Shown here: in pieces, positions 15,924-60,763 of the stretch
Position numbering within the stretch: the stretch's first letter is position 1
Layout: the number at the start of each line of letters is the position of its first letter
From: Malacoraja senta
Taxonomy: Eukaryota
DNA length: 63,950 bases
Assembly (NCBI GenBank): GCA_038087875.1
Contig: JAXLNO010003741.1
Span: forward strand, 310,001-373,950
Reading direction: 5' to 3'
Position numbers and translations under genes: made by a program
The notes under the pieces: model-generated
Seen by the model: the letters and a program-made list of their open reading frames with translations, nothing else
The model's database searches: none
Told to the model about the DNA's origin: nothing

Positions 15924-16819
15924 TCATCTGGTTCCAGACCACTGCCGCGCCAGTTTCATAGGGTTACTAACCGCGTTTTTCACTTCCTGTCTGAACGTAC
16001 TCTGGGTCATCCCATAGATACAAGTGTTCGCGCAGGAGCTGATGCGCATGAGCAAGACGCCCACTTCATTGGCGAGGTAAGAGGGGCTTGTTTGATCCCC
16101 GCCCACGAAGTTCTCTGTGACACGAGTGGAAATGTAGGTCACAGTTGACGTTGTCCACAGCAGTATGTAGGCGCCGGACACCGTGAACAGTAAAATAATG
16201 GACTTTGTCCGTTTCTCTGTCTCAGTGTCCTTGCCATCCAGTGCCTTCAGGCGCCGGCGGACTCTGCTGGCCGCAACGATGTTCCTGACCGTCAACCCGT
16301 TAAACAATAAAACCAGAAGGAAGGGGAGGAAGGAGAGAGAGATGCTGCACATCCACGAGAAAGCCACCCACCAGATGGAGGTGAAGTAGGCGGGTTTGGG
16401 TCGGCACCCCCACTTGACACTGTCCATAGTGAAGCGTGACTCGTACATGAAGTTAAAGGGGATGTACTTTATGCAGCACAGCGCGCACATGGACACAATG
16501 ACCACGGCGGCCGTCCTATCCGTGCAATAGATGAGTCTCAGCTTCGGGCAGCAAATGCTGACAAAACGGTCAAAGGTGAAGGACACTGTTAACCAGACGG
16601 AATAGTCCACGATGACGATCCGCAGGTACACATTAGAAGGACAAACTGCGCTGAGGGAGAGGAAGGAGTTAGGGACGTAGTAAATGTAGATTTCCCGGAG
16701 TAACACGTGTAAGATTATAACGAGAAGGTCGGAGATTGCCATCGCCACCATGTAACGGGTGATTCCTCTGGAGAGCCCGCACTTTCCCCGGTGTAGGATC
16801 GCAGCCGTCAGCACGTTCG
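15924..16819 (-). CDS. GPR139/GPR142-like class A GPCR, copy A, exon 2 (spliced protein 321 aa with exon 18956-19025)
   Basis: Open 7TM frame: MVAMAISDLL (TM2), VCP, FTFDRFVSICCP (DRF), KYIP, WGC (ECL2 Cys), SCANTCIY (TM7). Acceptor TTCTTCCTTCAG|CG AAC GTG, phase 1. Confidence 0.9.
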
Positions 16820-17009
16820 CTGAAGGAAGAACAAAAATGCAATGGAATTAATATTTGAATGGAACCATCATTTAATGGAATTAAGATTAGGTTTGGGGGC
16901 TGCAAGAAAGCATGAGGGGATCAGATACGGTGAATGGACAAGAGCCACGTGATATCGAGTTAGAGTCGAGAATAAATGGGGCATTGGGGTAAAGTCTATT
17001 TTAATGGGG

Positions 17010-17262
17010 AGTCTTATTCCACGAGTCCGTTCTGGGTGAAATCGAGAGCACAGAACAGCACGATCTTGTGGAAGAATAAAGCGAAGTCGGCGTCACATCC
17101 CAAGTCTGGTTCCAGGCCACTGCGGCGCCAGTTTCTTGGGTTTACTAATAACCCCGGTTAAATATTTAAGCGCGTTCTTCACTTCCTGTCTGAACGTACT
17201 CTGGATCATCCTATAGATATACGCGTTGGAACACGGGCATAAACAAGGGATGTACTTCACAT
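17010..17262 (-). pseudogene. Internally deleted GPCR exon-2 remnant (TM4 KYIP fused to TM7/C-tail and 3'UTR) inside the intron of copy A
   Basis: ORF 17093-17389 ends VKYIPCLCPCSNAYIYRMIQSTFRQEVKNALK...QWPGTR. DNA 17010-17225 aligns to 15832-16030. Confidence 0.8.
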
Positions 17263-18955
17263 GAAGCTTTACCACAGAGAGGGCGGTGGGTGTAAGGAAT
17301 GGGCTGGTAGATGAGGTATTTGAGGTAGATAATAAAACATCATTTGAAACGCATTTGGGCAAATTCGAAGACAGGAACGTTTCCGACAAATGTGAGTTAA
17401 AAGCGTGTCAATGGGACAAGTGTAGATGGGGCATCGTGGACGGAATGAACAAATTGGATCGAAGGCTCTACTTCCGCGCTGTATTACTTTATGAATGATG
17501 ACATTCAACGAGACGGACCACAAAAGGTGCTCAATTGGAGTTCAAAGCGTTCGTTGCCGCACGTCATTCAATACCATTTTGCATAGGCAGAGTGATTATA
17601 TCAGCTTCATTTAAAAAACAGTGTAATCATGTCGCCAGTCCCAAAATACTCTCGAAACTCCAATATAAGGTCATCAATCTGAAAAGAAAACTCTGTATCT
17701 TTGCAAGACAAGAAAAAAAGCTAAACAATCTGGAAACGGGCTTTAGGTCCAAGATCTCAATCTGTAAAATGCTCACGCTTTAGCTCCAAGACTCATCAGC
17801 TGGTCTGACGGTGACCATCAGAGATTGAAGGGATGGTCTTTGAACTGAAACACCAACCCGTGATCTGCCCCTTTCTGTTTTCTAGCACATCCTATTTCTA
17901 TTTCAGGTTTAGGCAATCTCTCGCGTTCTAATTAAACCACTTCAATTTCTCCTTCTGCTCTTTAAAATCATTTTGGTTTCGTTATCAATCAAATTGGCAA
18001 GCAGAGAGAAAACTAAGGGATCTGGATAACTGAAATGGGAAAGGTATTGCTGAAAATACTCGGGCTGTAGGTGATGGAGAGTGAGACGAGGTGCAGCATT
18101 TCGGCGAACTCGTTTTACGATGCAGTGAAGAGGGTGGCTTTGGAGAGATTTAAGTGGTGCCTGCGTTGACAACCGACAAGGGAGCCGGAATAGACGGAAG
18201 CAGTTGTGCTGTCTGAGCGAGGGTGAAGGTTTATTATTGGCTGGTGATAGTGGAGGAGGACAGGACACAGAAGGCAGATTAAGATTCCTTCACCTATAAT
18301 CAGCGGCATCATCACCACTTTGTCCTTTTGTCTCACTTGGTCACCAACTTGTACCCCACACTCACCACTCGCCTATTCGTTAACAATCAACTCCAATATG
18401 TTGGAAGCACGAATAACTGCAGACGTTGGAGTAGCTCATTCGGTCATGGAATCTGAAGAAAGATCCTGACCCGAAACGTCGGCTATCCATGTCCGCCAGA
18501 GATGCCGCATGACCCGCTGACGTACTCCAGTACTTTAGGATCCAATGTAATGTTCTCGGTCTTTTTACAAACACTTCCTTATCAATATCTCCTTCTCCGG
18601 CGCTACAGACCTGTGAGCCCCACCATCCTTGAATTCTGACCTCTTGAAAAACTTATCAGTTTAGTTATTCCAATATTCCGTTCTTTGGAGAGTCAAGTTC
18701 CCGTTTACCCCCATTTACGAAGCTGCTTTCATTCAACCCGCTGTCCAACCGTTCTACGTCTATCCGAATATCTTCTATTCTGTTCCCTGTCCATTTGATT
18801 GTGCATTGCGACGCTACGGCGATGCGTATTCGGATGATTTGGCTGTACTGATCGGAGTACAGTTTGTTGTTGTGCAGGGGGTTACGAAAAAGTACTCACG
18901 CCCGGTAGAGTTGAATCAGAGCAGCAACGCATTAAGCGACTCAATCACAGCTTAC

Positions 18956-19025
18956 CAGGGATACCAAACGCCGCCAGGATCGGATAGATGATTTCATTGA
19001 CGTACAGAATTGCTGCCCGTCCCAT
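18956..19025 (-). CDS. GPCR copy A exon 1 (MGRAAILYVNEIIYPILAAFGIP)
   Basis: 70 nt from ATG to CCT G|GTAAG donor. Homologous 70-nt exons at 38145, 41354 and 47458. Completes TM1 in frame (GIP-A-NVLT). Confidence 0.85.
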
Positions 19026-19084
19026 CTGGAAGAGTCCCAGTGTCGGCGTTAAGTCCGGGGAGCACAATTGAGCAACAGCGCGCT

Positions 19085-26370: not shown

Positions 26371-27377
26371 TGACAATGTAATCTATCTTGCCCCAATTAA
26401 CTAACTTCCCATAACATCCGGATCCGTCCCTATTCAAAACAACCTTCTACCAGCCTCTGCGTAAAATAGAACTTTCTCCGCACATCTCTTTTAACTTCAT
26501 AAACCGAGAATGGATTATTTATTATATGATTCGAGAAGAACTGGGGTGGGTTTTCAGGTTCACTGATTTTAATACAATGTCACTTTCTCTCAAAATATGG
26601 ATGTTAATGTGAACATTAATCAATGCCAATAGTTCCATTTCACCACTGCGTGCAATCTGATCCAGGAATATGACACAATGGATCGTGGATAAATGTTGCA
26701 GACACTTGTTACAGCGAACCGTTCAGCAAATTTGGCAGGAAGCCTGTGTTTTGCCAGGGTTGTTCCAGGGTTGTGCTTCCCGTATAAACACAGAAAAAAT
26801 GAACATTAAACGGATTCAGTTGAGGTGGTGGGGGGAGAGATGGGGGTCGGGTGGTGGGGTTTAATTGGCAGTTGGATGGAGAAAGGCCTGAGATGAAAAG
26901 AGGGAACGTTTAAGCGACATAGCTTAGGGCAGAGGAAACGTAAAATATCAATCCAGAGCAAGGACTATAAGTGGGAGGAGACAGGGGTGGGGATGGGGAT
27001 GCGGTATGGGAAAGGGATAAATGGGTGCACAACGCTAAGAGAGGGGACGCACATGGTTTGAGGCTAAAGTTGTAGAACATGTTGACTTCGAGCAAACAGG
27101 CTGTTCAGTCGCGCTTGAAATCATTTTGAAGAGGTGCTGGGCGCGCTAACTGGGGAAACATACCGGGACCTGAAAGTGAGAATAAATCGGACAATGGTAT
27201 ACAATCTATTTCCATGAAGATTCCTGTGCCCGCTGTGGATGGAATCGAACGCACATGATAGAGTCAACTTCTGAAAGAATACGACACGATACGATGCGAT
27301 AGAACTTTATATATCCCAGGATGGAAATTGATCGAATAGAGAGAGGGGCAGCAGCCTATCCTAACCCCATTTGCAGG

Positions 27378-28267
27378 CTACTGCCTCGCCGGTTTATTGG
27401 GTTTAATATCAGCCCGAGTTAAATGTTTAACCGCGTTCTTCACCTCCAGCCTGAGTTTCCTCTGTCATCCCGTAGATACAAGTGTTGCCGCAGGAGCTGG
27501 TGTGCATGAGCAAGACGCCCACGTCATTGGCGATGTAAGATGGTCTTGTTTGATTCCCGCCAACACAATTCTCAGTGACGCGAGTACAGACGAAGTGTCA
27601 CAGCTACCGTTGTCCATAACTGTATGTGGGCGCCGGGGACGGTGAAAAGGAAAACGACGGACTTTCGCCGATTCTCCGCCTCGTTGTCTTTGCGTTCCAG
27701 AGACATCAGACGCCGACGGACTCTGCTCGCTGCTACGATGTTCCTGACAGTCAGTCCGTTGAAGAAGATGATTAGAAAGAAGGAGAGGAAGGAGATAGAT
27801 ATCGAGGAAAAAAACATCCACCGGGTGGTAGTGAAGTAGGCGGATTTGGGCCGGTGCCCCCAGTTCACACTGTCCACGGTATAGCGGGGCGCGTCCATGA
27901 GGTGAAAGGGGATGTACTTTATGCAGCACAGCACGCACATGGATACAATGATCATGTCGGCCGTCCTGTCCGTGCAATAGATGAGTTTCAACTCTGGCAA
28001 CAAATACAGGCAAAACGGTCAAAGGTGAAGGCCACGGTTGTCCAGACGGAATAGTCCAGCGTGATGATCCGCATGTATATATTGGAAGGACAAATTGCGC
28101 TGAAGGAGAGCAAGGGATGAGGGACACAGTAAATATATATTTCCCGGATTAACACGTGGAAGATGAGAACGTGGAGGTCCGCGATTGCCATCGCCACCAT
28201 GTACCGGGCGATTCCTCTGGAGAGGCCACTATTTCCCCGGTACAAGATCGCAGCCGTTAGCAGTTCG
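27378..28267 (-). pseudogene. GPCR copy B exon 2, frameshifted pseudogene
   Basis: A 1-nt deletion right after the acceptor gives CG AAC TGC TAA. Further frameshifts at ~27995 and ~27590. Pieces are in ORFs 27988-28440 and 27572-28003. Paralogous ARQ-TAG end at 27378. Confidence 0.9.
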
Positions 28268-33377: not shown

Positions 33378-33757
33378 CCCGCCCTCTCCACGCCCGCCGA
33401 GACTGACAATCTAGCAACTTACCCCCCCCCCCCACACCGCTGCGACACTATCATTATAGCCACTCCCCATCCACACACACAGCGCCGACATTGACACTCC
33501 AGCCATTTCCCTCCACCCCCCCCCCCCCACACTGCGCCGACAGACACTCTAGCTACTCCCGCCCCATCCACACCGCGCCGACACTGACTCTATAGCCACT
33601 CCCCCTTCCGCACTGCGGCGACACTGACACTATAGCCATTCCTCCCGCTCTCCAAACCTCGCGACACTGACACAATAGCTACTCCCGCCCTCTCCAAACC
33701 GCGCCGACACCGACACTGCAGCCACTTACCCACCGTACACAGCCACGTTTCTGGCGG
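33378..33757. repeat. C-rich minisatellite, ~45-55-bp unit (CCGCGCCGACACTGACACTATAGCCACTCCC...)
   Basis: About 7 degenerate copies running into an N gap. Confidence 0.85.
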
Positions 33758-33950
33758 NNNNNNNNNNNNNNNNNNNNNNNNNNNNNNNNNNNNNNNNNNN
33801 NNNNNNNNNNNNNNNNNNNNNNNNNNNNNNNNNNNNNNNNNNNNNNNNNNNNNNNNNNNNNNNNNNNNNNNNNNNNNNNNNNNNNNNNNNNNNNNNNNNN
33901 NNNNNNNNNNNNNNNNNNNNNNNNNNNNNNNNNNNNNNNNNNNNNNNNNN
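33758..33950. other. Assembly gap
   Basis: N run. Confidence 1.
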
Positions 33951-34535: not shown

Positions 34536-34724
34536 NNNNNNNNNNNNNNNNNNNNNNNNNNNNNNNNNNNNNNNNNNNNNNNNNNNNNNNNNNNNNNNNN
34601 NNNNNNNNNNNNNNNNNNNNNNNNNNNNNNNNNNNNNNNNNNNNNNNNNNNNNNNNNNNNNNNNNNNNNNNNNNNNNNNNNNNNNNNNNNNNNNNNNNNN
34701 NNNNNNNNNNNNNNNNNNNNNNNN
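34536..34724. other. Assembly gap
   Basis: N run. Confidence 1.
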
Positions 34725-38144: not shown

Positions 38145-38214
38145 CAGGGATACCAAACGCAGCCAGGATCCGATAGGTAATTTCATTGACGTACAAGATT
38201 GTGGCCCGTTCCAC
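38145..38214 (-). pseudogene. GPCR copy C orphan exon 1 (start codon ATG>GTG; VERATILYVNEITYRILAAFGIP)
   Basis: 70-nt homologue of 18956-19025 with an intact GTAAG donor and upstream promoter block (38270-38400). The start is GTG, the conserved YP is changed to YR, and no cognate exon 2 is visible. Confidence 0.8.
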
Positions 38215-41194: not shown

Positions 41195-41290
41195 TTGTCT
41201 GGAAATGTTTGTTAAAGGGTCCGTGACTAATGTAATTGCCCCGTCACTCCCAGGAGCCACTGGAGGATTAGCGCGGGTATGAATGAGGAG
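41195..41290 (+). promoter_or_regulatory. Conserved GPCR proximal promoter block (copy D)
   Basis: TGTTTGTTAAAG..GTGACTAATGTAATTG..TCCCAGGAGCCACTGGAG..GGTATGAATGAG. Confidence 0.55.
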
Positions 41291-41353
41291 AGGAGCCGCG
41301 CTCTTTGATCCACTGTGTCTCCGGTTTGCTGCCGACACTGCTACTCTTCTAGA

Positions 41354-41423
41354 ATGCGGCGGGCTCCGATTCTGTACGTGAAGGAGATCGTCTATCCGGT
41401 TATGGCGGCGTTTGGAATCCCTG
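41354..41423 (+). CDS. GPCR copy D exon 1 (MRRAPILYVKEIVYPVMAAFGIP)
   Basis: AGAATG start, 70 nt, CCT G|GTAAG donor. Confidence 0.88.
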
Positions 41424-41699
41424 GTAAGATCAATCATTTTTGGTTTAGGTTTATTATCTTCACGTGTGCCGACGTAAAGCGAAGGGCTATATTTTGCATG
41501 CTATCCAATCTGATCACAGAAAATTTACATAAATACAATCAAGTCAAACGCGTACAATCGGTAGCGAAATTAGATTTGAGGAGGTAAGGCGAATTTTATC
41601 TGACAATCGTAGAAACCTTCTCAGGGAACTGCACAATCGGACGCCATGTCCCATGTCGTTAGATGTGTAGCAAGGAACTGCAGATGCTAATTTCGACCG

Positions 41700-41905
41700 A
41701 ATATATTCACAAAATGCTGGAGTAACACGGCGGGACAGGTAGCATCTCTGGAGAGAAGGAAATGTGTGGCGTTTCGGGTCGAGACCTTCAGATTCTGAAG
41801 CATCTTCTGAAGAAGGGTCTCGACTCGAATCGTCACCCATTCCTTCTCTCCAGAGATGCTGCCTGTCCCGCTGAGTTACTCCAGCATTTTGTGTCTATCT
41901 TCAGT
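41700..41905. repeat. Inverted pair of Penelope-type terminal sequences (~90-bp arm hairpin); duplicated at 58095-58295
   Basis: CACAAAATGCTGGAGTAAC...TTCAGA is followed by its reverse complement CTGAAGAAGGGTCTCGAC...GTTACTCCAGCATTTTGTG. Confidence 0.8.
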
Positions 41906-43170: not shown

Positions 43171-44072
43171 CCAACGTGCTGACGGCTTCGATATTGTACC
43201 GGGGACAGTGCGGACTCTCCAGAGGAATCACACGTTACATGGTGGCGATGGCAATGTCCGACCTGCTCGTCATCTTCTTTCAAGTATTGCTCCAAGGAAT
43301 CTACGTTTACTACACCCCTGACTCCTACCTGAGCCACACCACGGTGTGCCCTTCGTACGTATACCTACGCATCCTCACGCTGGACTATTCAGTCTGGTTA
43401 ACCTTGTCCTTCACCTTTGACCGTTTCGTCAGCATTTGCTGCCCGAAGCTGAGACTCACGTATTGCACGGATAAGGCCGCCGCCGTTGTCATTGTGTTCT
43501 TGATGCCATTGAGTTGTTTAAAGTACATCCCATTCTACTTCATGTACGAGCCACGATTCAACGTGGACAGTGTGAACTGGGGGTGCCAGCCCAAACCCGC
43601 CTACTTCACTTCCATCTGGTGGGTGGCTTTTTCTTGGATGTGTAACATCTCTCTCTATTTACTCCCTTTCGTCTTAACGCTGCTTCTGAACGGGCTGACG
43701 GTCAGGAACATCATAGCGGCCAGCAGGGTCCGCCGGCGCTTGAAAGGACCGGAAGGCAAAGACGCCGAGGTGGAGAATCGGCGCAAATCCATCGTCTTAC
43801 TCTTCACCGTATCCGGCACCACCATATTACTGTGGACGACTGGAGGGGTGACTTTTATCTGTACACGAATTACAATTAATTTTGTCGGCTCTGATCTCAC
43901 AAGTCCCTCGAACATTGCAAATGAGGCGGGGGTCTTGCTCATTCGGCTCAGCTCCTGCGCCAACACCTGTATCTACGCAATGACGCAAAGCAGGTTCAGG
44001 CAGGAGTTGAAGAATGGGATTAAAAGTTTCATTCGTTTTTTTATTAAACCCACGAAATGGTCGCGGCAGTGA
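43171..44072 (+). CDS. GPR139/GPR142-like GPCR copy D exon 2 (spliced 323 aa)
   Basis: TCTGTCTTCTGCAG|CC AAC GTG acceptor. Intact 7TM frame with DRF, WGC and SCANTCIY. Confidence 0.9.
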
Positions 44073-46364: not shown

Positions 46365-47090
46365 AGTTGAGTTGAGGTGAGTTGAGCTTAGTTTATTGTC
46401 ATGTTTACCGAGGTACTAAGAAACATTTTGTTGCGTGGTAACCAGTCAGCGGAAGAACAATGCATGATTACTATCTAGCCATTCACAGTGTACAGTTACA
46501 TGATAAAGGGAATACCATGAAGACCATTTAGTGGAAGATAAAGCCAGTAAAGTCCGATCAATGATAGCCCGAGGGGCTACAATGAGAAAGATAGTAGTTC
46601 AGGGCCGCACTCTAGTTGTGGCGGGATGCTTTGGTTGCCTGAAAACAGCTGGGAAGAAACTGGCCCTGAATCTGGAGGTGTGGATTTTCCTACTTCTTTA
46701 CCTTTTGCCCGATGGGATAGAAGAGAAGAGGGAGTAGCAAGGGTGCGACTAGTTCTTGATTAAGCTGGTGGCGTTGCCGAGGCAACACGGGATATAAATT
46801 GAGCCAATGGAAGTGAGGTTAGTGTTTGTGATGGTCTGGGTTGCGTCCACAATTCTCTGCAATTTCTTGCGGTCTTGGACGGAGCTGTTCCTAAACCATG
46901 CTGTGATGCATCGGGATAAAATGCTGCCTATGGCGCATCTGCAGAAGTGGCTGAGAGTTGTTGGGGACAGCCTTCCGAGGAAGTAGAGGCCTTGTTGTGC
47001 CTTAGTGGTCATTGCTTCAATAAGGGTGGTCCAGAAAGAAGTTGCATGTGATACTTCTGGGAATTTGCAGCTTTTAACCATTTCTACTTC
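46365..47090 (-). mobile_element. Rex1/Babar-like LINE 3' fragment
   Basis: ORF 46749-47081 has KAQQGLYFL, SILSRCITAWF and DRKKLQRIV. (AACTC)n tail near 46365-46390. Confidence 0.75.
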
Positions 47091-47274
47091 GGATAATTTT
47101 TATTTCGGATTTCACCGTGTCAAATACCTAAACATCCACCAGGTCCGTTGCCCTGTGATTGAAGCGATTCCCGCCACAGGAGAAGTTCGTCACACTGAAT
47201 TTTGGATACAGAAATGTAGCAGAAATGAGCCCGCTGCCTCCTCCACTCTTTGCACTGATTTGCTTCCCCCATGA

Positions 47275-47400
47275 AGTCGTTGAAATTAATTCATCTGTGT
47301 GGAAAAAAAGAGCCTGTTTGTTAAAGAGCCTGTCACTAATGTCATTGCCCCACCATGGCTCGGTCCCACCGGAGGATTTCAGCGAGTATTAATGAGGATC
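47275..47400 (+). promoter_or_regulatory. Conserved GPCR proximal promoter block (copy E)
   Basis: TGTTTGTTAAAG..GTCACTAATG..CCCACCGGAG..GAGTATTAATGAG. Confidence 0.55.
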
Positions 47401-47457
47401 GGATCCGCTCTCCTTGCTCCATTGTGTCACCCGAAAGTGCTGCTGAAATCTTCTAGA

Positions 47458-47527
47458 ATGGAGCGGGCTCCGATTCTGTACATGAAGGAGATCGCCTATC
47501 CGATTCTGGTGGCGTTTGGAATTCCTG
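47458..47527 (+). CDS. GPCR copy E exon 1 (MERAPILYMKEIAYPILVAFGIP)
   Basis: AGAATG start, 70 nt, CCT G|GTAAAT donor. Confidence 0.88.
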
Positions 47528-49099
47528 GTAAATCCTTTCACATTATTTAACGTGTTGAAGATTTGCCTCAATATTACCGTATGTTTTGTGTTCTGCTATT
47601 TTTGTAACCTATGTTCCCGCTTGGGTTCAGCAGTCTCGCTGCTGCTCATGTAATGTGTCCGTTCTTCTTTCCTTTCCCTGTCTTATAGTAACCTATGCTG
47701 TTCTAGGGTACGTTTATAAGTGATCATCCTGTTTCTCTTAATCTCACTCTCTCCCTGGTCAAAATGTCCTCGTCCGTATCCCGCGTGTTAGTCGTCTTTC
47801 GGCAAAGAAACCTTGGTTTCAGTTGTATGAAGGATCTGCAGATGCTGGTTTAAACCGAAGATGGACAAAGTGGAGTCACTCAGCGGGACAGGCAGAATCT
47901 CTGGAGAGAAGGAGTGAGTTACGTTTCGGGTCGAGACCCTTCTTCAGACTAATGCGTTTAAGCTGCTGGCTATGGAGCTCAGCGGCTCTGGGGAACGGAC
48001 TGAATCTCGGTGGCCGTGCGTGATCCGATTTATCCGTGCCCAACATTACCCTGTAGACAGACACGACAAACTGGAGTAACTCAGCTGGTCAGGTAGCATG
48101 TCCGGATAAAAGTAATTGGTGACGTTTCGTGTCGAGACCCTTCTTCGGACTGAGAGTCGGAGTAGAAATATGCGAAGGCACATAGAACAAATTAATTAAA
48201 GGTTTGCAGAAAGACAGATCAAAGCCAGCAACGATGATCTAGGCAAGTTGGAACGCATAATGGTTCATCGTTGGCTGTGGGGAAGGTAATAACGTGTATT
48301 GCAAACAGTAAAACTCAACAGAACGACATTGTGCTATGAATATGAAGTCCCCTTACTCCTGATACCTGGAGATATTTGGTAACAAACACAGGTGGCGCCT
48401 CCACGTCCCACGCACGAATTATCAATGGCAGCTCCCGCGCTGCTAGACCGGATGTTGTAACTACTGAACTCCAGATGGCATGACTCTTTAAACCACCGCC
48501 GCGCAGAACGGCTTAAAGGCATCGAAGACAGATGTCAAAGTGACCATAATTTAAAGAAAACACCGAACACAGAACATAGAAAACAGAAAACAGAACAGTA
48601 CAGGACAGGAAAGGGACCATGGCCCTATAATATCCGTGTCCCAAAATCAACATAATCTCCTGCACCCACTGCATCTCCGTCCATTCCTTGCATATCCAGG
48701 CCCCTTCGAACCCACTACATCTCTGTGTAAAATGTTGCACAGAGTGCGGCACGGTATAAAGGAGATATACGGGATCGTTTTTTTACATGGAGCGTGCTAC
48801 CGTGAGCGGTGTTGGAGTCAGATATGATAGTGGCATTTAAGAGGCTCTTGGAGAGACACGTTGATATTCAGGGAGTAAAATGTTATGGCGCGCGTGCAGG
48901 CAAAGGACATTAGTATAACTTGGCATGATATTCGATGTGGATATTTAGGGTGGAATGGCCTGTTCCTGTTCTCTACTGTTCTGTGTTGTCATTTGTAAAG
49001 TATTCGCTCCAATGAGGCCGTCGCTCTGAACGCAGCCTCTTCTCTCACACTTGGCTGCTGATTAACTGGTTATTTTGCTGCACATTGTTCTTTCTCCAG

Positions 49100-50001
49100 C
49101 TAACGTGATGACAGCTGCGATCCTGTGCCGGGGAAAGTGCGGTCTCACCAGAGGAATCACCCGCTACATGGTGGCGAGGGCAATGGCCGATCTGCTTGTG
49201 ATGATCTTACACGTGTTGCTCAAAGAAGTCTACATTCCCTACACCTATAATTCATTCCTCTCCCGCAGCACGACGTGCCCTTCATATGTTTACCTGCGCA
49301 TCTTCGCCCTGGACTGTTCCGTCTGGTTAACCGTGTCTTTCACCTTTGACCGTTTTGTCAGCATTTGCTGCCCGAAGCTGAGACTCGTCTATTGCACGGA
49401 TAGGACGGCCACCGTGGTCATTGTGTCTTTGTGCGCGCTGAGCAGCTTAAAGTACATCCCCTTTCACTTCATGTATGAGCCATACTTCACCATGGAGAGT
49501 GTGAATTGGGGGTGCCGGCCCAAAGCCGCCTATTTCACCTCCATCTGGTGGATGTTGTTTTCTTGGATGTGTAACATGTCATTATCCTTCCTCTCTATCA
49601 TTCTAATCCTGCTTCTGAATGGGCTGACAGCCATGAGTATCGTAGCAGCGAGCAGGATCCGCCGGCGACTGGAATCACTGGATGGTAAGGACTCTGAGGC
49701 GGAGAATCGACGCAATGCAACCGTGTTGCTCTTCACCGTGTCCGGCACCTACATATTACTCTGGACGACAGGGGCAGTGACTTTCATATTTACGCGAATT
49801 ACAATCAATTTTGTGGGCTCTGATCTCACAAGCCCCTCGACCATCGCAAATGAGATGGGAATCTTACTCATTCGTCTCAGTTGTTGCTCCAACACCTGTA
49901 TTTACGCAATGACCCAAAGCAAGTTCAGAGAGGAGGTGAAGAACGGGATTAAGATTCTAACTCGATTCATCGTTAAACCTGTGCAACTGGCGAGGCAGTG
50001 A
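49100..50001 (+). CDS. GPR139/GPR142-like GPCR copy E exon 2 (spliced 323 aa)
   Basis: TTGTTCTTTCTCCAG|CT AAC GTG acceptor. Intact 7TM frame with DRF, WGC and CCSNTCIY. TM2 has M>R (MVARAMADLL). Confidence 0.88.
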
Positions 50002-50580
50002 GCCTAGATTTGCAATTCGATTATCTGCTCGTTCTATGTATTTCCATAATCAAATCACTCCGTTCTGTGGAAGGGTCCCAACCCGAAACCTCGCCTGACT
50101 ATTCCCTCCACATATGCTGCCTGACCCATTGAGTTCCTCTTGCAATTTGTGGGTTTGATCAAGATTCCAGTATGTGAAGTTCCTTGTATTTACTTTCTTT
50201 CACCACGCTTTCGGCCGGAACGATCTCATTCAATACTAGTCATCATAGTTTTTAGCCCGGAATATCTCTTAGCGTGTTCAATCTGCCCCCACCCGTCGCT
50301 ATTTACCGTCGCTCCATTATACTTCATTATTTCAATGTGTGCAGTTGTGGTCTGCAGTTGGCAGGGCGTGTCCACTTATCCAAACCTTCAATGATCCATG
50401 GACATGAACACAAAACCCTTTACATTACCCATCATTTTTTTCGTAGCAACTTGCCGCTCTGGGGTTGTAGTCCCGATCAACCAACCTACCTATTGCGGTC
50501 CTTGCACTTCTTTTAACCTGCACTTTCTCTGTTGCTGTAATGTTGTGACCATGTAACGTTTTATTCAGCACACTGGTCAT

Positions 50581-51275: not shown

Positions 51276-54200
51276 AATTCTATCACTTTTTTCACTTTAA
51301 ATATTTTTATAACTTAATTTTTGAATGGAAAAACAAGAATAATACAAGGAGATGTGTTCGGAAGAACGATGTATATGATTTTAAATTCATCTATTTGAGG
51401 TTCAGGAGCAAGGTCAGGTTTTATGTGTTGCACCTTCTGCTCGGTTATAGACCACCTTAGAAATAATATGCAAGATGTTAATATGACAAGAGGGGGTCAG
51501 GGAATAACATTTTGTAGTTGGAATGTCAAGGGAATCAATGAACCAATTAAGAGAGGTAAAGTCTTGGCACATCTAAATTTAATCAAAGCAGATATTATAT
51601 TCCTTCAAGAAACACACCTTAAAAAGGAATCCCAACACAGACTTAAAGCAAAGTGGATCGCTGAATCATATCATTCCTCCTTTTCCCATAAGTCCAGAGG
51701 AGTTTCAATATTAATTCGTAAAGGAATACCTTTTACGAATTTATCAACAATAGCGGATATTGATGGTAGATATATTATATTAGTTGGAGAGCTAAATGGA
51801 GAAAAAGTGATTCTTCTGAATGTATATGGGCCTAACTTTGATAACCCTATGTTCTTTAATAAAACATTTAATAAAATTCCTGAATCTACACAATATAAAT
51901 TAATAATTGGAGGAGACTTCAACTGTACATTAGATTCATACTTAGATAGATCATCAAGGCAAAAAAAAGTAAAATCTCAATCAAGTGTATTTCTAAATTC
52001 ATTTATTAATACCACTAATATTAAGGATGTCTGGAGAATAGAAAATCCAACTGGACGGGAATATTCATTTTACTCTCCAGTACACAAAACATACTCAAGA
52101 ATAGATTATTTTTTAGTTGACTCCACGTTTATCCCTTTTACTTATAACTCAAAATACCATAATATTATAATCTCAGACCACGCACCTGTAACATTTATGA
52201 TTAAATTAAATGGAATGTCCGAGAAACAAACATATTGGAGATTCAACCCGCAAATCTTGAACGAAAGATCATGCCAGGAATACATTATTAAACAGATTCA
52301 AATATTTTTTGAGGTAAATGATAACCCTGACACACCTACTTCTCTTATGTGGGAAACGTTTAAAGCGTTTGTTCGAGGTGCATTAATCTCTGCTCAAGTA
52401 TTTTATAATAAAGAGAACAGGATTAAACAACAAACATTGGAAAAGGAAATCAAACAACTAGATTTAGACAATGCGAGAACGCCATCTATTTCAAAACATA
52501 ATAAAATTGCTGTATTGAAATATAAATTAAATAAAATGTATTCAGAACAAGTAATAAAACTTTATCAAAAAACGAAACAATTACATTTTGAATTTGGAGA
52601 CAAACCACAAAAACTATTAGCACGTCAGTTACGAAAAATGGAAGGGGAAAAAATAATTCATAAAATTAGAACAGAGACAGGAGAATTATTAAAAATGCCC
52701 AAGGACATAAATGAAAGATTTCTCCAATACTATCATAACCTTTATTCAACTAAAACTGTAACACAAACGGAAGGAATAGCAGATTTTTTACTAAAATGTA
52801 ATCTAAAAGGTTTAGATTCAAATGATAGAGAATTATTAGAAAGGGAGATTACGATAAAGGATATTGAGGAGTCTATTGGCTCTTTAAAAAATGGTAAAGC
52901 AGTAGGACCAGATGGTTTAGGCTCTGAATTTTATAAAAAAATTTATGACTTGCTATGCCCACGTTTACAAAGGCTGTATGAGCATATCTATACTCAACAG
53001 AAACTCCCAGATACTTTAAATGAATCTATAATAACACTTATTCCTAAAGCTGATAAAGATCCGGAAGATCCGGGATCATATAGAGCAATTGCACTTTTAA
53101 ATACAGATCAGAAAATATTAACTAAAATACTAGCGCATAGATTTTTACCACAAATTTTATACCTATTTCAATCAATTCCTATATACTTACCTAAGAAGTT
53201 TTTTAAAAATCTCGACTCAGATATCACTAATTTTATATGGGATTATACATCACATAGAATACAAAAAACCCATCTGAATAAACCTAAAGTATTGGGGGGT
53301 CTAGCACTACCTAATTTTATGTATTATTATTGGTCAGTAAATATTAAAAACATGATTCAACTGATGGATAACTCCGCCCAGCAAGTAGACTGGATTGTAA
53401 TGGAGAAAGAGGATTGCTCCTCTAGAAACATTGGAGCGATCCTCCTCTCTCCAATGAAACTGAATAACATAAACTATAATAAGAACCCAATTATTCATAG
53501 TACAATCCGTATTTGGAAACAAATAAAACAAAATTTAAAATTAAGAAACTTATCACTTTTATTACCTATAGTCAATAACCCTTCGTTTAGTCCTTCTATT
53601 ATAGATAAAGCTTATACACAATGGGATAGACTAGGAATTAAAACGCTTGGTGACTTGTATGAAACTGGAAAATTACTTTCATTTCAACAATTACAAATAA
53701 AATATAAACTCGGAAATAATCAATATTTTAAATATTTTCAAATATGCGACTATTTGAAAAAATATACAAAAGATCATTATAATAATCCAGTAGATGTATT
53801 GGACGAGGCAATGCAGATAAAATCGGAATCAGCAAACTTAATATCATATTTGTATAATATTATTTTAAATGTACAAATACCACCTACGGAGGGTATCAGA
53901 AGAGACTGGGAACAAGAGTTAGCTATTAAAATTTCAAAGGAAAGTTGGAATGAATACTTATTAAACGTGCATAAATGCTCGATTAATGTAAGACACACTT
54001 TAATACAATTTAAAATTTTACATAGATTATATTATTCGAAAACTAAAATTCATAAAATTTTCCCAAACGTATCATCTATTTGTGATAAATGTCAATCCCA
54101 AGAAGCAACTATAGCGCACTCATTTGTCTTCTGTACAAAAATTCGAAAATTTTGGAATGAAATTTTTGAAATCTTTACAAAGTTATTTAAAACAAGACTG

Positions 54201-57200
54201 ATACCCAAAGCAGAATGGATTATCTTCGGAATAACGGAAGATGATCCAGAACTAAATGTGTTTCAAAAGAAATTAATGGACTATGGGTTAATAACTGGAA
54301 AAAAGCTAATTCTAAAATTTTGGAAGAAGGCTCCAATACCAACTATAAATATGTGGATTTCAAATATGTTTGAAACATTACACCTAGAAGATATAAGACT
54401 CCTCCTAGCAGGTAAACCAGATCACTTCCACCTGACGTGGTCTGCATTTATAGAATTATTACAAACATAGGGTGCAAAAGTACTTTAAAAAAATAAAAAA
54501 TTGAGGTCAGGTAAGGGGGGATGATAGTTGAAGAGTTGGTATGTCCTATTTACGTGATGCTCAAAAAAAAAACATTTGTTTCTCTTTTTTTCTCTTTCTC
54601 TTTTCTTTTCTTAGGGCCTATTTCTTAACTCTTTTTCTTTTTGTTTTTAATTTCGCTCTTATAGGGTCTTCGTCCTTTTTTGTTGTTACATTTTCTACAC
54701 TTTTCTACACTTGCACTTTTTCCTTCACTTTCTTCTTTCTTTCAATCTTTTCTTTTTCTAGTGTAAAAAAATAAATAAAGGGAGTACATTAATTGTAAGA
54801 AGATATAAATGACGAGTATTAATGTATGTGGTTGTAATGTAATGTACTTCTAATAAATAAAAATTTAAAAAAAAAAAAAAAAAGATTAAGTACAGTGATG
54901 AATAAAATAATACACCCTGACCAAACAGGCTTTATTCAGAAACGGTACTCATATTATAATCTAAGAAGATTATTCAATATTATTTATTCTAAGAGAATTA
55001 TTAATGAAGATCTGGCAATAATCTCACTCGATGCTGAAAAAGCATTTGATCAGGTTGAATGGTCTTATTTATTTTCAGTGATGGAAAATATGCAACTAGG
55101 GGAGAAATTCTGTACATGGATAAAACTGTTATATACAAATCCTACGGCTACAATATTAACAAATCAAAGGTTGTCATCAAAATTCAGCCTATCTAGAGGT
55201 TGTAGACAAGGATGCCCGTTATCTCCATTATTATTTGCTTTAGCTATTGAGCCACTTGCAGAAAGAGTTAGGGGTCATCCGGAAATATATGGGTATATCA
55301 CAAAGGACACAGTGAATAAAATTTCTCTATACGCAGATGATGTACTAATTTACATTACAAAACCAGAAATTAGTATTCCAAACTTATTAGAGCTAATAAC
55401 CCAATTTGGTTCACTCTCAGGATACAGAATAAATTGGAATAAAAGTGAAATTATGCCAATAAGGGAACATAACAAACACATAATACAACAATTTCCATTT
55501 AAAATAGGAAACGAAAAATTTAAATACCTAGGTATCTATGTAACTAAGATATATACATCATTATTTAAAGCAAATTTCCCCCCACTACTGAATAAACTAC
55601 ATAAGAATATTCAATACTAGAAAACACTTCCTATCTCAATGATTGGCAAAATTAATGCCATAAAAATGATTTTTTTTACCGCAAATATTATACCTTTTTC
55701 AGACAATTCCGATATATTTGTCAAAAAACTTTTTTTTTAAATTGGACTCTATTGTTAATGATTTTATCTGGGATTATAAGAATCATAGGATAAACAAAAG
55801 ACATTTGTGTAAATCAAAAATAAATGGAGGTTTGGTTTTACCCAACTTTCTGTTTTATTTTTGGGCAGTTAATATTAAAAATATGAATTTCTGGTTGGAC
55901 GAAATAGAACAACAACCAGATTGGTTAAAAATGGAAAAGGAAGATTGTTTGCCTTTTGATATCGGTTCGATATTATTTGCTACATCTAAATTAAACAAAA
56001 AAAATTATAGGGAAAACCCTATAATATTTAGTGCCATACGAATTTGGAAACAATTAAAAAAGACATTAAAATTAGATAATTTATCACTTTTTCTCCCAAT
56101 TGTGGATAACCCTTTGTTTAAACCCTCATGGTTGGACAGGGGTTTTACACAATGGAGGAATTATGGAATTAAAAATATGGGACAACTTTATAAGGAAGGC
56201 ACCTTTCTGACATTTCAGGAGTTGCAACAGACTTATGGACTTCGAGGAAATGATTATTTCAGATATCTTCAACTCAGAGATTATGTAAAATCGAATACTC
56301 AAAACTTTCGAATTAGAAATTCAGAAATTCTTGACGAATGTTGGAATAAACATCCTAATACAGAAAAATTAATATCTTATATATATAATATCTTATTAGA
56401 CAGTGACATTCCATCGACGGACTTACACAGACAAACATGGGAAAAAGAATTAAATCAAATAATAACGAAAGATACTTGGGAAGAAAGTTTACAACATATA
56501 CATCAATGTTCATTAAATGCCAGACATTCTTTAATACAATTTAAAGTAATACATAGATTACATTATTCAAAAACAAAATTACATAAAATCTTTCAACATA
56601 TCTCACCTATATGTGATAAATGTCAACATTTAGAAGCCACCTTATCTCATATGTTTGCAAACTGTACAAAAATTAAAAAATTCTGGGTAAATATTTTTAG
56701 TATAATATCTAAAGTGACCAGCACACAAGTGGACCCGGATCCAAAATTTATAATACTTGGAACATCAGAATTAAATCAAACATTTACAACAACACAAAGA
56801 AACTTTATTGATTATAGTATAATAACAGGAAAAAAATTAATTCTAAAATTTTGGAAAGGCCCTACGGCCCCCACAATCAAAATGTGCATTATAGAAATGA
56901 CGGAGACCTTAAACGTGGAAAGAATCAGATTTTCCCTGTTGGATAAACAGGAATTATTCGTTGGAACATGGTCTCCCTTTATTGATTATTTAAAGGGTCA
57001 GAATGGTTCAGCACGGGAACCTGACTAATGCTCGGGCTAAAAAATGGATGAAATGCTATATTCTGAAATGTACGAATATATCTCGAATGAAGTTTTTTTA
57101 TTTTAATAAATTTTTCCACTCTTCTTTAACTATCTTTCTCTTTTGTTTTTTTGTGTTTTTTGTTTTTTTTTTGTGTTTTTTTTTTCTCTTTTCTTCTTCT

Positions 57201-59294: not shown

Positions 59295-59577
59295 GATGGC
59301 GACAGGATAGATATTTTTAATGCTGGAAAAAACCTAACTGGTCACGCATCATCAGTGTGCAATGGAACAACGTCGTTGTTTCTATTCAGAGGCCATGTTA
59401 ATACAGCAAAATACTCGCGTTATCGGTAGGTTACAGGTCGTTGTAAATTGTGCTTAGTACATTGGCCAGTGGCATAGTCTGGCAAGGTAGAACAAAAAGG
59501 TTGGAGACAGTGTGAAGTGATCATGTGGACGGACTGGTGTTGGATCTGTTTGACTGGGAATTTTGAGGGTCGACGAG
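59295..59577 (+). repeat. 283-bp apparently identical copy of 58509-58791, inserted into a SINE
   Basis: GATGGCGACAGGATAG...GAGGGTCGACGAG occurs twice. The paralogous site at ~42905-42930 lacks it. Confidence 0.9.
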
Positions 59578-59819
59578 CATCAGGAGGAAACCCATGTGTC
59601 ACAGGGAGTACGTGCAAACTCCACTTAGCGAGCCCCCGAAACCAGGATTGATTCATGTTGCTGGTGCTGTGAGGCAGCGGGTCCACCAGCTGCGCCACTG
59701 AGCTGGTCTCTCCAATGAGGTCAAATCGCAGCCTTTGTCGTCTCTACTTAGTGTAATAGAGACGACAATAGAGTCGGTTAACTACCTGGTCATTCTCCTC
59801 TTAATTCTGTCTCCTGCAG

Positions 59820-60763
59820 CCAACGTGCTGACGGCTTCGATCTTGTACCGGGGACAGTGCGGGCTCTCCAGAGGAAACACGCGTTACATGGTGGCGATGG
59901 CAATGTCCGACCTGCTCGCCATCTTCTTTCAAGTATTGCTCCAAGGAATCTACGTTTACTACACCCCTGACTCATACCTGAACCACACCACGGTGTGCCC
60001 TTCGTATGTATACCTACGCATCCTCACGCTGGACTATTCAGTCTGTTTAACCGTGTCCTTCACATTTGACCGTTTCGTCAGCATTTGCTGCCCGAAGCTG
60101 AGATTCACGTATTGCACGGATAAGACCGCCGCCGTTGTCATTGTGTTCTTGTTGGCGCTGAGTTGTTTAAAGTACATCCCATTTTACTTCATATACGAGC
60201 CACGATTCAACGTGGACAGTGTGAACTGGGGGTGCCGGCCCAAACCCGCCTACTTCACTTCCATCTGGTGGGTGGCTTTTTCTTGGATGTGTAACATCTC
60301 TCTCTACTTACTCCCTTTCGTCTTAACGCTGCTTCTGAACGGGCTGACGGTCAGGAACATCATAGCGGCCAGCAGGGTCCGCCGGCGCTTCAAAGGACTG
60401 GAAGGCAAAGACGCCGAGGTGGAGAATCGTCGCAAATCCATCGTCTTACTCTTCACCGTATCCGGCACCACAATATTACTGTGGACGACGGGAGCGGTGC
60501 CTTTCATCTGTACACGAATTATAATTAATTTTGTCGGCTCTGATCTCACAAGTCCCTCGAAAATCGCAAATGAGGTGGGGGTCTTGCGCATTCGGCTCAG
60601 CTCCTGCGCCAACACCTGTACCTACGCAATGACGCAAAGCAGGTTCAGGCTGGAGTCGAAGAACGGGATTAAAAGTCTCATTCGTTTTATTATTAAACCC
60701 ACGAGCGGTCGCGGCACTGATCCGAGTGCTGAGGTTGTAATACAACGCGGCTGTTCTCTCTAA
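59820..60763 (+). CDS. GPCR copy F exon 2, open but with no own exon 1 (recent duplicate of copy D; possibly incipient pseudogene)
   Basis: TCTGTCTCCTGCAG|CC AAC acceptor and near-identity to copy D. A 1-nt deletion near the C-terminus extends the tail. Substitutions W>C (SVCL), I>N (RGNT) and L>R in TM7 (VLRIR). Homology to the copy D locus starts only at ~57990 (=41605), downstream of exon 1. Confidence 0.65.

What the first reader, a model, noticed from the sequence alone, without database searches (positions are those of the whole stretch)
15924..60763. Expanded tandem array of short-N-terminus GPR139/142-like GPCRs: candidate undescribed chondrichthyan chemoreceptor/nutrient-sensor family
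Seen: at least 7 paralogous units in ~45 kb (3 intact, 1 open orphan, 3 broken). All share a 70-nt exon 1, a phase-1 intron in TM1 at GIP|AN, an N-terminus of only ~10 residues with no N-glycosylation sequon, DRF for DRY, no CWxP proline in TM6 and NTxxY for NPxxY. Established: mammalian GPR139 and GPR142 are single-copy receptors activated by L-Trp/L-Phe, and GPR139 has the matching GLP-ANILT TM1 motif. Cartilaginous fish have few OR/TAAR genes. Inference: clustered birth-and-death expansion of compact receptors is the signature of sensory repertoires, so this may be an unrecognised amino-acid/odorant receptor family rather than true GPR139 orthologues.
Basis: partly seen in the sequence, partly recalled or inferred. 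Interest (0 to 1): 0.85.

Follow-up and report, generated by a model that had tools for sequence, protein, structure and literature searches.

The report
Skate cluster of GPR139-like orphan receptors
This stretch of skate DNA carries a tandem cluster of working and decayed genes from a large shark-and-ray receptor family. The family is a distant cousin of human GPR139, no paper I could search describes it, and what it detects is unknown.

Summary
The window has three intact two-exon class A GPCR genes (A, C, D; 321-323 aa). It also has one open but exon-1-less copy (F), one frameshifted exon 2 (B), one dead exon 1 (X) and a C-terminal scrap. The 70-nt exon 1, the phase-1 intron at GIP|AN, DRF, W-without-P in TM6 and NTxxY are all real. 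Both assembly gaps lie in satellite-rich spacer outside every gene model.

The genes are not GPR139 orthologues: about 21-25% identity, phmmer E 1e-6. They belong to a family with dozens of copies per shark or ray genome, chimaera included. Public pipelines label them 'probable GPR139', and no paper I could search describes the expansion.

Two results are new here. The family's sister is a single-copy, well conserved gene of amphibians and sturgeon with the same intron. The window's genes sit in a ray-specific sub-expansion.

Family-wide, the ligand-pocket side is far more variable than the G-protein side. Within this subclade selection is purifying (omega about 0.3) with no excess at pocket positions, and GPR139's amino-acid-contact residues are not kept. 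F evolves neutrally and is best read as a young pseudogene.

A chemosensory role is plausible but untested. The scan has flagged this family on other DNA of the same genome: 18 notes, several placing it among TCR V segments.

The parts
18956..19025 (-). Gene A, exon 1. It is 70 nt and runs from the ATG to the first base of a split Ala codon, with donor G|GTAAG.
15924..16819 (-). Gene A, exon 2 including the stop codon. The intron is 2136 nt and the spliced product is 321 aa and intact. Its orthologue in Amblyraja radiata (P0008) is 94-95% identical.
   Evidence: terminal-branch nonsynonymous:synonymous codon changes 3:7
17105..17242 (-). C-terminal fragment of another family copy (38-44 aa, 46-60% identity) lying inside gene A's intron.
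27334..28267 (-). Copy B, an exon-2 pseudogene. There is a 1-nt loss just after the acceptor, which gives a stop at codon 4 in the correct phase, and at least two further frame switches. No exon 1 was found.
33758..33950 (.). Assembly gap in the spacer between B and X. It abuts a 43/93-bp satellite at 33422-33724 and lies outside all gene models.
34536..34724 (.). Assembly gap in the same spacer, also outside all gene models.
38145..38214 (-). Copy X, an exon-1 relic. The ATG has become GTG and YP has become YR, while the donor is retained. No exon 2 is detectable downstream.
41354..41423 (+). Gene C, exon 1 (70 nt).
43171..44072 (+). Gene C, exon 2 including the stop codon. The intron is 1747 nt and the spliced product is 323 aa and intact. 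Its orthologue P0013 in Leucoraja erinacea is 93% identical.
   Evidence: terminal-branch nonsynonymous:synonymous codon changes 5:8
47458..47527 (+). Gene D, exon 1 (70 nt).
49100..50001 (+). Gene D, exon 2 including the stop codon. The intron is 1572 nt and the spliced product is 323 aa and intact. Its orthologue P0001 in L. erinacea is 88% identical, and the locus is collinear with L001.
   Evidence: terminal-branch nonsynonymous:synonymous codon changes 8:7
51423..57028 (+). AT-rich LINE sequences (endonuclease and reverse-transcriptase ORFs) lying where F's exon 1 and upstream intron would be expected.
59820..60763 (+). Copy F, an open exon 2 (313 codons) with an intact acceptor but no exon 1. 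It is a duplicate of C (91% identity), is absent from the collinear L. erinacea locus and evolves neutrally. It has lost the family-invariant Trp (SVW->SVC) and its C-terminal end is changed. It is best read as a young pseudogene.

Best explanation
The region is a tandem, birth-and-death cluster of an orphan class A GPCR family.

Shown:
- The window holds three functional-looking two-exon genes (A, C, D) and four decayed copies (B, X, F and a fragment).
- The family is greatly expanded in cartilaginous fishes.
- It lies in the GPR139/GPR142/sex-peptide-receptor branch of rhodopsin-like receptors, but it is a separate orthogroup.
- Its nearest relative is a single-copy, conserved gene of amphibians and sturgeon that shares the same phase-1 intron in TM1.
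- The window's genes belong to one subfamily. Sharks have 1-3 copies of it and rays and skates have multiplied it.
- The intact genes are under purifying selection.
- The intracellular face is nearly invariant across the family: the ICL1 motif GKCGLS, DRF-ICC-KL, the inner ends of TM5 and TM6, NTxIY and helix 8.
- The extracellular half and the generic pocket positions vary radically between paralogues.

Inferred:
- The family works as a ligand-diversified receptor repertoire, with many different pockets feeding one common G-protein partner.
- New copies arise by local duplication and are lost through transposon insertion and frameshifts.
- The most likely use is sensory detection of small molecules or peptides. 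An external chemosensory role is the single most likely option, at roughly 35-40%, but it is unproven.
- The GPR139 ligands L-Trp and L-Phe cannot be transferred to these receptors.
For: - Gene models and motifs.
- Class A fold: Pfam 7tm_1 at E 1e-15 to 1e-18; AlphaFold2 pLDDT 90.8 with seven TM helices, helix 8 and an ECL2 hairpin.
- Superfamily placement: the family profile against PDB gives GPR139 2.4e-17, against 7e-13 for the next hit.
- Intermediate sequences point the same way. Coelacanth P0227 gives 1.8e-18, P0261 2e-15, Xenopus P0291 5.6e-16 and amphioxus P0249 7e-28, each with GPR139 far ahead of other solved receptors.
- The Foldseek top hit is the Drosophila sex peptide receptor, with GPR139 at ranks 4, 9 and 12. 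The literature places GPR139/142 with the MIP/SPR receptors (PMC8514136).
- Family size and taxa.
- Sister orthogroup and tree: amphibian plus sturgeon clade 100/100; joined with the chondrichthyan clade at 100/99; window genes inside a batoid clade at 100/100.
- Same intron in Xenopus.
- Selection: pooled omega 0.30 over five sister pairs; branch counts.
- F branch: 17 nonsynonymous against 5 synonymous changes, compared with 15 against 24 on the C and outgroup branches (Fisher p=0.007).
- Variability: mean entropy 2.08 on the outer side against 1.26 on the inner side (p=1e-14), and 2.42 at pocket positions.
- Turnover between skate genera.
Against: - No expression, ligand or coupling data exist for any member, so the function is pure inference.
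- No true GPR139 or GPR142 sequence could be brought into the tree. 'Separate orthogroup' therefore rests on bit scores, identity and auto-annotation, not on topology.
- Monophyly of the chondrichthyan sequences relative to the amphibian/sturgeon gene has only 89/62 support.
- Within the window's own subclade, pocket positions are not more variable than the rest (p=0.36) and show no raised omega. That pattern fits a few conserved ligands better than an arms-race chemoreceptor.
- My pocket positions come from motif anchors and a profile alignment, not from a solved complex, and they can be off by one residue in TM5 and TM7.
Confidence: 0.72

Rival explanations
1. One reading: the family is a true external chemoreceptor repertoire (olfactory, gustatory or solitary chemosensory cells). 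It would compensate for the very small OR/TAAR/ORA repertoires of cartilaginous fishes.
For: - The family has dozens of copies per genome in tandem arrays, with pseudogenes.
- The pocket side is variable and the signalling side conserved.
- The receptors are compact, with an N-terminus of about 4 residues.
Against: - There is no expression evidence.
- The catshark study found no GPCR among the 50 most specific 'brain & olfactory epithelium' genes. This is weak evidence, because chemoreceptors are lowly expressed in bulk tissue.
- The sister gene is single-copy and conserved in amphibians, which is typical of an endogenous-ligand receptor.
- There is no pocket-focused positive selection in this subclade, and one-to-one orthologues persist across skate genera.
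Confidence: 0.35
2. The family is an internal receptor expansion. Candidates are immune-cell chemoattractant-type receptors, somatosensory or viscerosensory neuron receptors (like the MRGPRs), or receptors for a diversified endogenous peptide family.
For: - The fold has an ECL2 beta-hairpin, and its nearest structural neighbours are peptide receptors: SPR, ghrelin, orexin, opioid and chemokine receptors.
- The ancestry lies in a neuropeptide-receptor branch.
- Overall selection is purifying and orthologues are stable.
- Unchecked scan notes place other family clusters among TCR V segments in this genome.
- A TRIM-type PRY-SPRY gene neighbours the cluster both here and in Rhinoraja.
Against: - No matching expanded ligand family is known.
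- Genomic neighbours do not show function.
- This window has no RSS-flanked V segment.
Confidence: 0.3
3. The genes are extra copies of true GPR139 or GPR142 and keep that receptor's L-Trp/L-Phe sensing.
For: - Public pipelines name them 'probable GPR139'.
- The TM1 motif is shared and GPR139 is the best PDB match.
- Both lack the Pro of NPxxY.
Against: - Identity to GPR139 is 21-25%, and single-sequence phmmer E is 1.4e-6, barely ahead of the mu-opioid receptor at 1e-5.
- GPR139 itself is described as highly conserved across vertebrates (PMC12208981).
- The residues needed for agonist action are replaced in the window's proteins. F109 becomes I, H187 becomes C, R244 becomes G or S, and N271 becomes V.
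Confidence: 0.03
4. Exon modules are interchangeable: the orphan open exon 2 (F) is used by splicing from an upstream exon 1 (D's or C's). This is another first-stage note on the same stretch.
For: F keeps a good polypyrimidine tract and CAG acceptor and has an open frame of 313 codons.
Against: - The F branch shows 17 nonsynonymous against 5 synonymous changes, close to the neutral ratio. The C branch shows 6 against 9.
- F has lost a Trp that is invariant in the 50-sequence alignment, which includes amphioxus, and its C-terminus is altered.
- D's exon 2 is a terminal exon lying between D's exon 1 and F.
Confidence: 0.05

Closest known systems
GPR139 (human and vertebrate orphan receptor; agonists L-Trp and L-Phe)
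   Same: - Class A receptor.
- Best solved-structure match to the family profile.
- Shared TM1 motif G-x-P-A-N-(I/V)-L-T.
- No proline in the NPxxY motif (NFFLY in GPR139, NTCIY here).
- Conserved W6x48.
   Different: - Only 21-25% identity.
- DRF in place of DRY, and no proline after W6x48.
- N-terminus of about 4 residues.
- Agonist-contact residues 3x33, 5x43, 6x51 and 7x38 are not conserved.
- Dozens of copies per genome instead of one.
- Orthologues diverge much faster, at omega 0.2-0.5.
Single-copy 'probable GPR139' gene of amphibians and sturgeon (for example Xenopus tropicalis P0291; uncharacterised)
   Same: - Sister clade in the tree (100/99).
- Same two-exon structure, with a phase-1 intron splitting the Ala codon after G-x-P in TM1.
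- Shared motifs: WLTVAFTFDR, CC-x-KLK-x-x-YCT, NGLTV and SN-x-CIY.
   Different: - About 30% identity to the window's proteins.
- Single copy and conserved at about 70% across the three amphibian orders.
- DRY retained.
- No expansion.
Tentative 'GPR210A/B' orphans of coelacanth, gar and some teleosts (Rinne et al. 2019, PMC6504862)
   Same: - Extra GPR139/142-like orphans without a human orthologue.
- The coelacanth/teleost group P0227/P0243/P0261 in my tree probably corresponds to them. It is the next outgroup.
   Different: - About 28-32% identity.
- ERF and NMYLY motifs.
- Low copy number.
- That survey contained no cartilaginous fish.
- I could not check the accessions, so the equivalence is an inference.
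Sex peptide / myoinhibitory peptide receptor of protostomes
   Same: - Top Foldseek hit (E 5e-11, TM 0.74).
- The literature groups it with GPR139/142.
   Different: - 20% identity.
- Long N-terminus.
- Known peptide ligands.
- Single copy.
Vertebrate chemoreceptor and sensory GPCR repertoires (TAAR, OR, T2R, MRGPR)
   Same: - Tandem arrays, lineage-specific expansion and pseudogenes.
- Short N-terminus.
- Variable pocket with a conserved signalling face.
   Different: - No sequence kinship beyond class A.
- The coding region is split by an intron.
- Sensory expression is unknown.

Membership tests
Rhodopsin-like (class A) GPCR | The 7tm_1 profile match exceeds the curated threshold and the protein has seven TM helices plus helix 8. 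| tested here: met
   Pfam PF00001 scores 55-65 bits against a cut-off of 30.5. The AlphaFold2 model has pLDDT 90.8 with 7 TM helices and H8.
Rhodopsin-like (class A) GPCR | Hallmark residues are present: N1.50, D2.50, C3.25 with an ECL2 Cys, (D/E)R(Y/F), W6.48, N7.49 and Y7.53. | tested here: met
   All are present in A, C and D. P6.50 and P7.50 are replaced by Thr, and D has also lost P5.50.
GPR139/GPR142/SPR branch (superfamily level) | The sequences are closer to GPR139 than to any other solved class A receptor, directly and through intermediate sequences. | tested here: met
   The family profile scores 66 bits against GPR139 and 51 bits against the next hit. The intermediates put GPR139 ahead of the next hit by 8 to 13 orders of magnitude in E-value. 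Foldseek ranks SPR first.
GPR139/GPR142/SPR branch (superfamily level) | A phylogeny including GPR139, GPR142 and protostome SPR/FMRFa receptors places the family in one clade with them. | not testable with these tools
   No true GPR139/142 or SPR sequence could be retrieved as a usable id. The amphioxus query returned only amphioxus paralogues.
GPR139 orthogroup (true orthologue) | Sequence conservation with vertebrate GPR139 is high, and there is one copy per genome. | tested here: not met
   phmmer E is 1.4e-6 at 31 bits. Identity is 21-22%. There are dozens of copies per genome.
GPR139 orthogroup (true orthologue) | The agonist-binding residues are conserved: F3x33, H5x43, W6x48, R6x51 and N7x38 (PMC5430874). 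| tested here: not met
   By the profile alignment, only W6x48 is conserved. The window's proteins have I, C, G or S, and V at the other four positions.
GPR139 orthogroup (true orthologue) | The intron sits at the same position as in the GPR139 gene. | not tested
   No GPR139 genomic sequence was available. The intron is shared with the Xenopus sister gene.
Vertebrate chemosensory receptor repertoire (operational definition) | The family is a large multigene family in tandem arrays with birth-and-death turnover. | tested here: met
   A. radiata, L. erinacea and P. pectinata each carry several members on a single contig.
Vertebrate chemosensory receptor repertoire (operational definition) | The ligand pocket is hypervariable or positively selected while the signalling face is conserved. 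| tested here: inconclusive
   Family-wide entropy at pocket positions is 2.42 against 1.26 on the inner side. Within the window's subclade there is no pocket excess (p=0.36), and pocket omega is 0.23.
Vertebrate chemosensory receptor repertoire (operational definition) | The genes are expressed in sensory cells, typically one receptor per cell, and respond to external chemicals. | not testable with these tools
   No expression data were reachable. The supplements of the catshark atlas are not held. The short Logan/ENA contigs are exon-2-only ORFs and say nothing about splicing.

The most novel reading that the evidence does not exclude
Cartilaginous fishes built their own large chemoreceptor family from a GPR139/sex-peptide-receptor-type orphan. 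That orphan stayed single-copy in amphibians and sturgeon and was lost in amniotes and most teleosts. If so, this would be a previously unrecognised vertebrate chemosensory receptor class. It would help explain how sharks and rays smell or taste with almost no OR, TAAR or ORA genes.
Probability: 0.3. Interest if true: 0.85.

Novelty: new variant of a known kind. Interest (0 to 1): 0.6.

Why it matters
Sharks and rays are known for keen chemical senses, yet they carry only a handful of canonical odorant receptor genes. Apart from the V2Rs, no large receptor repertoire has been described for them.

A family of dozens of fast-duplicating class A receptors is therefore an obvious candidate to examine. 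It is present from chimaeras to skates and has a diversified pocket with an invariant signalling face.

Even if it proves not to be chemosensory, two things make it useful. It is one of the largest unexplained GPCR expansions in a vertebrate class. It also comes with a built-in comparison, the single-copy amphibian and sturgeon sister gene, which could be deorphanised first. The work here also shows that the 'probable GPR139' label on hundreds of public chondrichthyan proteins is misleading.

Tried and rejected
- True GPR139/142 sequences for a tree. The amphioxus 'GPR139' query returned only amphioxus paralogues, and PDB hits give no usable ids. I did not type sequences by hand. There is therefore no tree with the named receptors.
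- Intron check in other relatives. The salamander gene spans 105 kb and no DNA was returned. The coelacanth protein is not on record. Xenopus worked.
- Missing exons. Relaxed tblastn (E<=5, word size 2) and blastn found no exon 2 for X and no exon 1 for B or F.
- TCR V segments. Earlier scan notes suggested them, but a heptamer/nonamer RSS scan with a check for an upstream YxC found none in this window.
- Evidence of transcription from short Logan/ENA contigs. These proteins are exon-2-only ORFs, so they are uninformative.
- Tissue lists from the catshark atlas. Its supplements are not held.
- Pocket-focused positive selection. NG86 on five independent sister pairs showed none. No codon-site models (PAML or HyPhy) were available.
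- F as a functional 'module'. Rejected because of neutral evolution and loss of an invariant Trp.

Full report
WHAT IS THERE

The window is vertebrate DNA, GC about 0.43-0.48 and rich in transposons. It comes from a skate. Its receptor proteins are 88-95% identical to proteins of Leucoraja erinacea and Amblyraja radiata. Window 40665-50366 is collinear with an L. erinacea contig at 82-91% nucleotide identity.

Self-comparison finds five copies of a ~0.9-kb receptor exon and four copies of a 70-nt first exon.

Three pairs make complete genes:
- A, minus strand: exon 1 at 18956-19025, exon 2 at 16819-15924, 321 aa.
- C, plus strand: 41354-41423 and 43171-44072, 323 aa.
- D, plus strand: 47458-47527 and 49100-50001, 323 aa.

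In all three, exon 1 is 23 codons plus one base. The donor is G|GTAAG or G|GTAAA and the acceptor is CAG|C. The phase-1 intron splits the Ala codon of GIP|AN, one residue before N1.50.

The remaining copies are decayed:
- B (28267-27334, minus strand) has a one-base loss right after its acceptor and at least two more frame switches.
- X (38145-38214, minus strand) is a lone exon 1 with GTG in place of ATG.
- A 38-44-residue C-terminal scrap sits in A's intron (17105-17242).
- F (59820-60763) is an open exon 2 whose upstream homology to C begins only at 57991, just after a LINE (51423-57028).

- FDRF at the DRY position.
- LLWTT, a TM6 Trp with no Pro.
- NTCIY at the NPxxY position.
- No glycosylation sequon before TM1.

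An AlphaFold2 model of the A. radiata family member P0004, which is 71-73% identical to A, C and D, has pLDDT 90.8 and pTM 0.86. TM1 starts at residue 5 and ECL2 forms a beta-hairpin.

THE GAPS

Both N runs (33758-33950 and 34536-34724) lie in the 9.9-kb spacer between B and X. They sit beside a 43/93-bp satellite. No family-like coding sequence lies near them, even at very relaxed thresholds, so no gene model depends on continuity across a gap. Gap sizes are only estimates, so X's missing exon 2 could in principle be hidden there.

WHAT FAMILY IT IS

Pfam sees only the generic class A profile.

- Against solved structures, a single window protein barely prefers GPR139 (E 1.4e-6) over the mu-opioid receptor (1e-5).
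- A 17-sequence family profile prefers GPR139 clearly, at 2.4e-17 against 7e-13.
- More slowly evolving relatives put GPR139 far ahead of every other receptor. These are coelacanth P0227, P0261, Xenopus P0291 and amphioxus P0249.
- Foldseek ranks the Drosophila sex peptide receptor first, with GPR139 at ranks 4, 9 and 12 at 21-22% identity.
- The literature groups GPR139/142 with the protostome MIP/sex-peptide, FMRFamide, proctolin and myosuppressin receptors (PMC8514136).

The family therefore belongs to that branch but is not GPR139. GPR139 is described as highly conserved across vertebrates (PMC12208981), while these proteins share about a fifth to a quarter of its residues.

SIZE AND SPREAD

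The word-indexed search returned 396 clusters at 90% identity with E<=1e-5. All 118 named proteins among the best 120 are from sharks and rays. Nearly all are auto-named 'probable GPR139', and 31 come from Heterodontus francisci alone.

The exhaustive HMMER search of 1.84 billion representatives found 86 clusters at 50% identity with E<=1e-30 and 147 with E<=1e-10. Every deep-branching representative I named is chondrichthyan, including Callorhinchus milii.

Earlier notes of this scan mention GPR139-like genes 18 times in this same genome, several among TCR V segments. Those notes are unchecked. This window has no RSS-flanked V segment.

WHERE IT CAME FROM

The nearest non-chondrichthyan hit, a salamander protein, turned out to represent a wider gene. 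It is single-copy, about 70% conserved across frogs, salamanders and a caecilian, and has a sturgeon orthologue at 46% identity.

In an IQ-TREE analysis (LG+C20, 60 sequences, amphioxus root) I found:
- The amphibian/sturgeon clade has 100/100 support.
- It is sister to the chondrichthyan sequences. The joint clade has 100/99 support, while chondrichthyan monophyly has only 89/62.
- A coelacanth/teleost group lies outside. This is probably the tentative 'GPR210' of PMC6504862.

The Xenopus gene has the same architecture. Its first exon is 73 nt and ends ...ATG CCA G|GTAAGC. After a 15-kb intron, the acceptor TTTAG|CA AGC resumes at the same Ala codon.

The ancestral jawed vertebrate therefore had this gene. 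It multiplied in cartilaginous fishes and was lost in amniotes and most teleosts.

Within the family, the window's genes fall in one subfamily (100/100) with two features:
- Sharks have one to three copies of it.
- Batoids have expanded it. The sawfish has ten members on one scaffold, and A. radiata has several members, four of them on one contig.

TURNOVER

- A, C and D each have a one-to-one orthologue in another skate genus.
- The collinear L. erinacea contig carries a frameshifted C-like copy and lacks the F-plus-LINE segment.
- F is thus a lineage-specific duplicate of C (dS 0.094).
- Polarised with the L. erinacea C orthologue, the F branch has 17 nonsynonymous and 5 synonymous codon changes, which is about the neutral ratio.
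- The C branch has 6 against 9, and C plus the outgroup branch 15 against 24 (Fisher p=0.007).
- F has also replaced the Trp of SVWLT, one of only five residues invariant in a 50-sequence alignment that reaches amphioxus. Its C-terminal end is altered too.

F is best read as a young pseudogene. That argues against the separate first-stage idea that its exon 2 is used as an interchangeable module.

SELECTION AND THE POCKET

- Pairwise NG86 omega is 0.20-0.36 between the older paralogues. It is 0.53 for D against its orthologue.
- Pooled over five independent sister pairs, omega is 0.30 overall. It is 0.26 in the extracellular half, 0.23 at 27 generic pocket positions and 0.36 on the intracellular side.
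- The genes are therefore constrained. In this subclade the pocket is not under stronger diversifying pressure than the rest.
- Across 139 full-length family members the picture differs. Mean column entropy is 2.08 on the outer side against 1.26 on the inner side (p=1e-14), and 2.42 at pocket positions (p=1e-5).
- Pocket changes are chemically radical, for example R/I/L/T/N at 3.32 and D/C/E/H at the position aligned to GPR139 H187.
- ICL1, DRF-ICC-KL, the inner ends of TM5 and TM6, NTxIY and helix 8 are almost invariant.

This is the pattern of a ligand-diversified repertoire coupled to one common transducer. It is compatible with chemoreceptors but not specific to them.

AMINO-ACID SENSING

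GPR139's agonists, including L-Trp and L-Phe, depend on F109(3x33), H187(5x43), W241(6x48) and N271(7x38). R244(6x51) forms the polar anchor (PMC5430874).

In the profile alignment the window's proteins have I, C, W, V and G or S at these positions, and R at 3x32. Only the toggle Trp is kept. The nutrient-sensor analogy is therefore not supported by sequence.

LITERATURE

Searches combined GPR139 or 'coupled receptor 139' with shark, skate, cartilaginous fish, expansion and GPCR repertoire. None found a description of this expansion.

The catshark sensory-genome paper lists tiny OR, ORA, TAAR and TARL repertoires and does not mention the family. The 2019 Ensembl cartography named related bony-fish orphans GPR210A/B but contained no cartilaginous fish.

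The library is incomplete, so 'undescribed' means 'not found'.

VERDICT

- This is a real, large, apparently unstudied, lineage-expanded orphan receptor family.
- It is distinct from GPR139.
- There is no sequence support for amino-acid sensing.
- There are no data on where it is expressed.

I put an external chemosensory role at about one in three.

Noticed in passing
window 9110-9721 (+); L007 1-3032: An ORF with PRY and SPRY domains, the last exon of a TRIM-type gene, lies about 6 kb from gene A. In Rhinoraja longicauda a RING/B-box/PRY/SPRY gene lies 7 kb upstream of a family member. The TRIM neighbour therefore seems syntenic.
   Followed up: partly
window 6680-7696 (+): There is an apparently intact 338-aa Tc1/mariner transposase of Sleeping Beauty type, with HTH_SB, HTH_Tnp_Tc3_2 and DDE_3 domains.
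   Followed up: partly
window 51423-57028 (+): A very AT-rich block (GC 0.29-0.30) holds LINE ORFs. They are a 1015-aa ORF with an endonuclease domain, a separate 241-aa reverse-transcriptase piece, and a 436-aa ORF that resembles the tail of the first. It looks like two nested or tandem LINE copies.
   Followed up: no
window 33422-33724: A satellite with 43- and 93-bp periods (C-rich, with a CGCCGACAC core) runs up to the first assembly gap. Similar GCCGACACTG strings occur just upstream of the receptor exon 1 copies.
   Followed up: no
L003 27876-28775 (-) and 18807-19727 (+): In Amblyraja radiata a member of a different, distant subfamily (about 45% identity) lies 8 kb from the orthologue of gene A, on the opposite strand. 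Distinct subfamilies therefore share clusters.
   Followed up: no
L001 2327-4590: The L. erinacea contig collinear with the window carries a frameshifted C-like copy. An intact C orthologue (P0013) sits on another contig (L005). This could be an assembly haplotype issue or a further duplication.
   Followed up: no
window 49100-50001 (gene D): D carries unusual replacements at otherwise conserved positions. Met becomes Arg in TM2, P5.50 becomes Ser, and Arg becomes Met after NGLT. Its terminal-branch nonsynonymous:synonymous codon changes are 8:7. It may be under relaxed constraint.
   Followed up: partly
window 12030-12605 (-), 62069-62596 (+), 14213-14645: There are further retroelement fragments, one with RVT_1 and one ORF with an ALKBH8_N-type hit. 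A third assembly gap lies outside the finding.
   Followed up: no
other windows of the same genome (scan notes): Eighteen first-stage notes mention GPR139-like genes elsewhere in this genome. Several report them interleaved and co-amplified with TCR alpha/delta V segments. I did not check these, and no V segment occurs in this window.
   Followed up: partly
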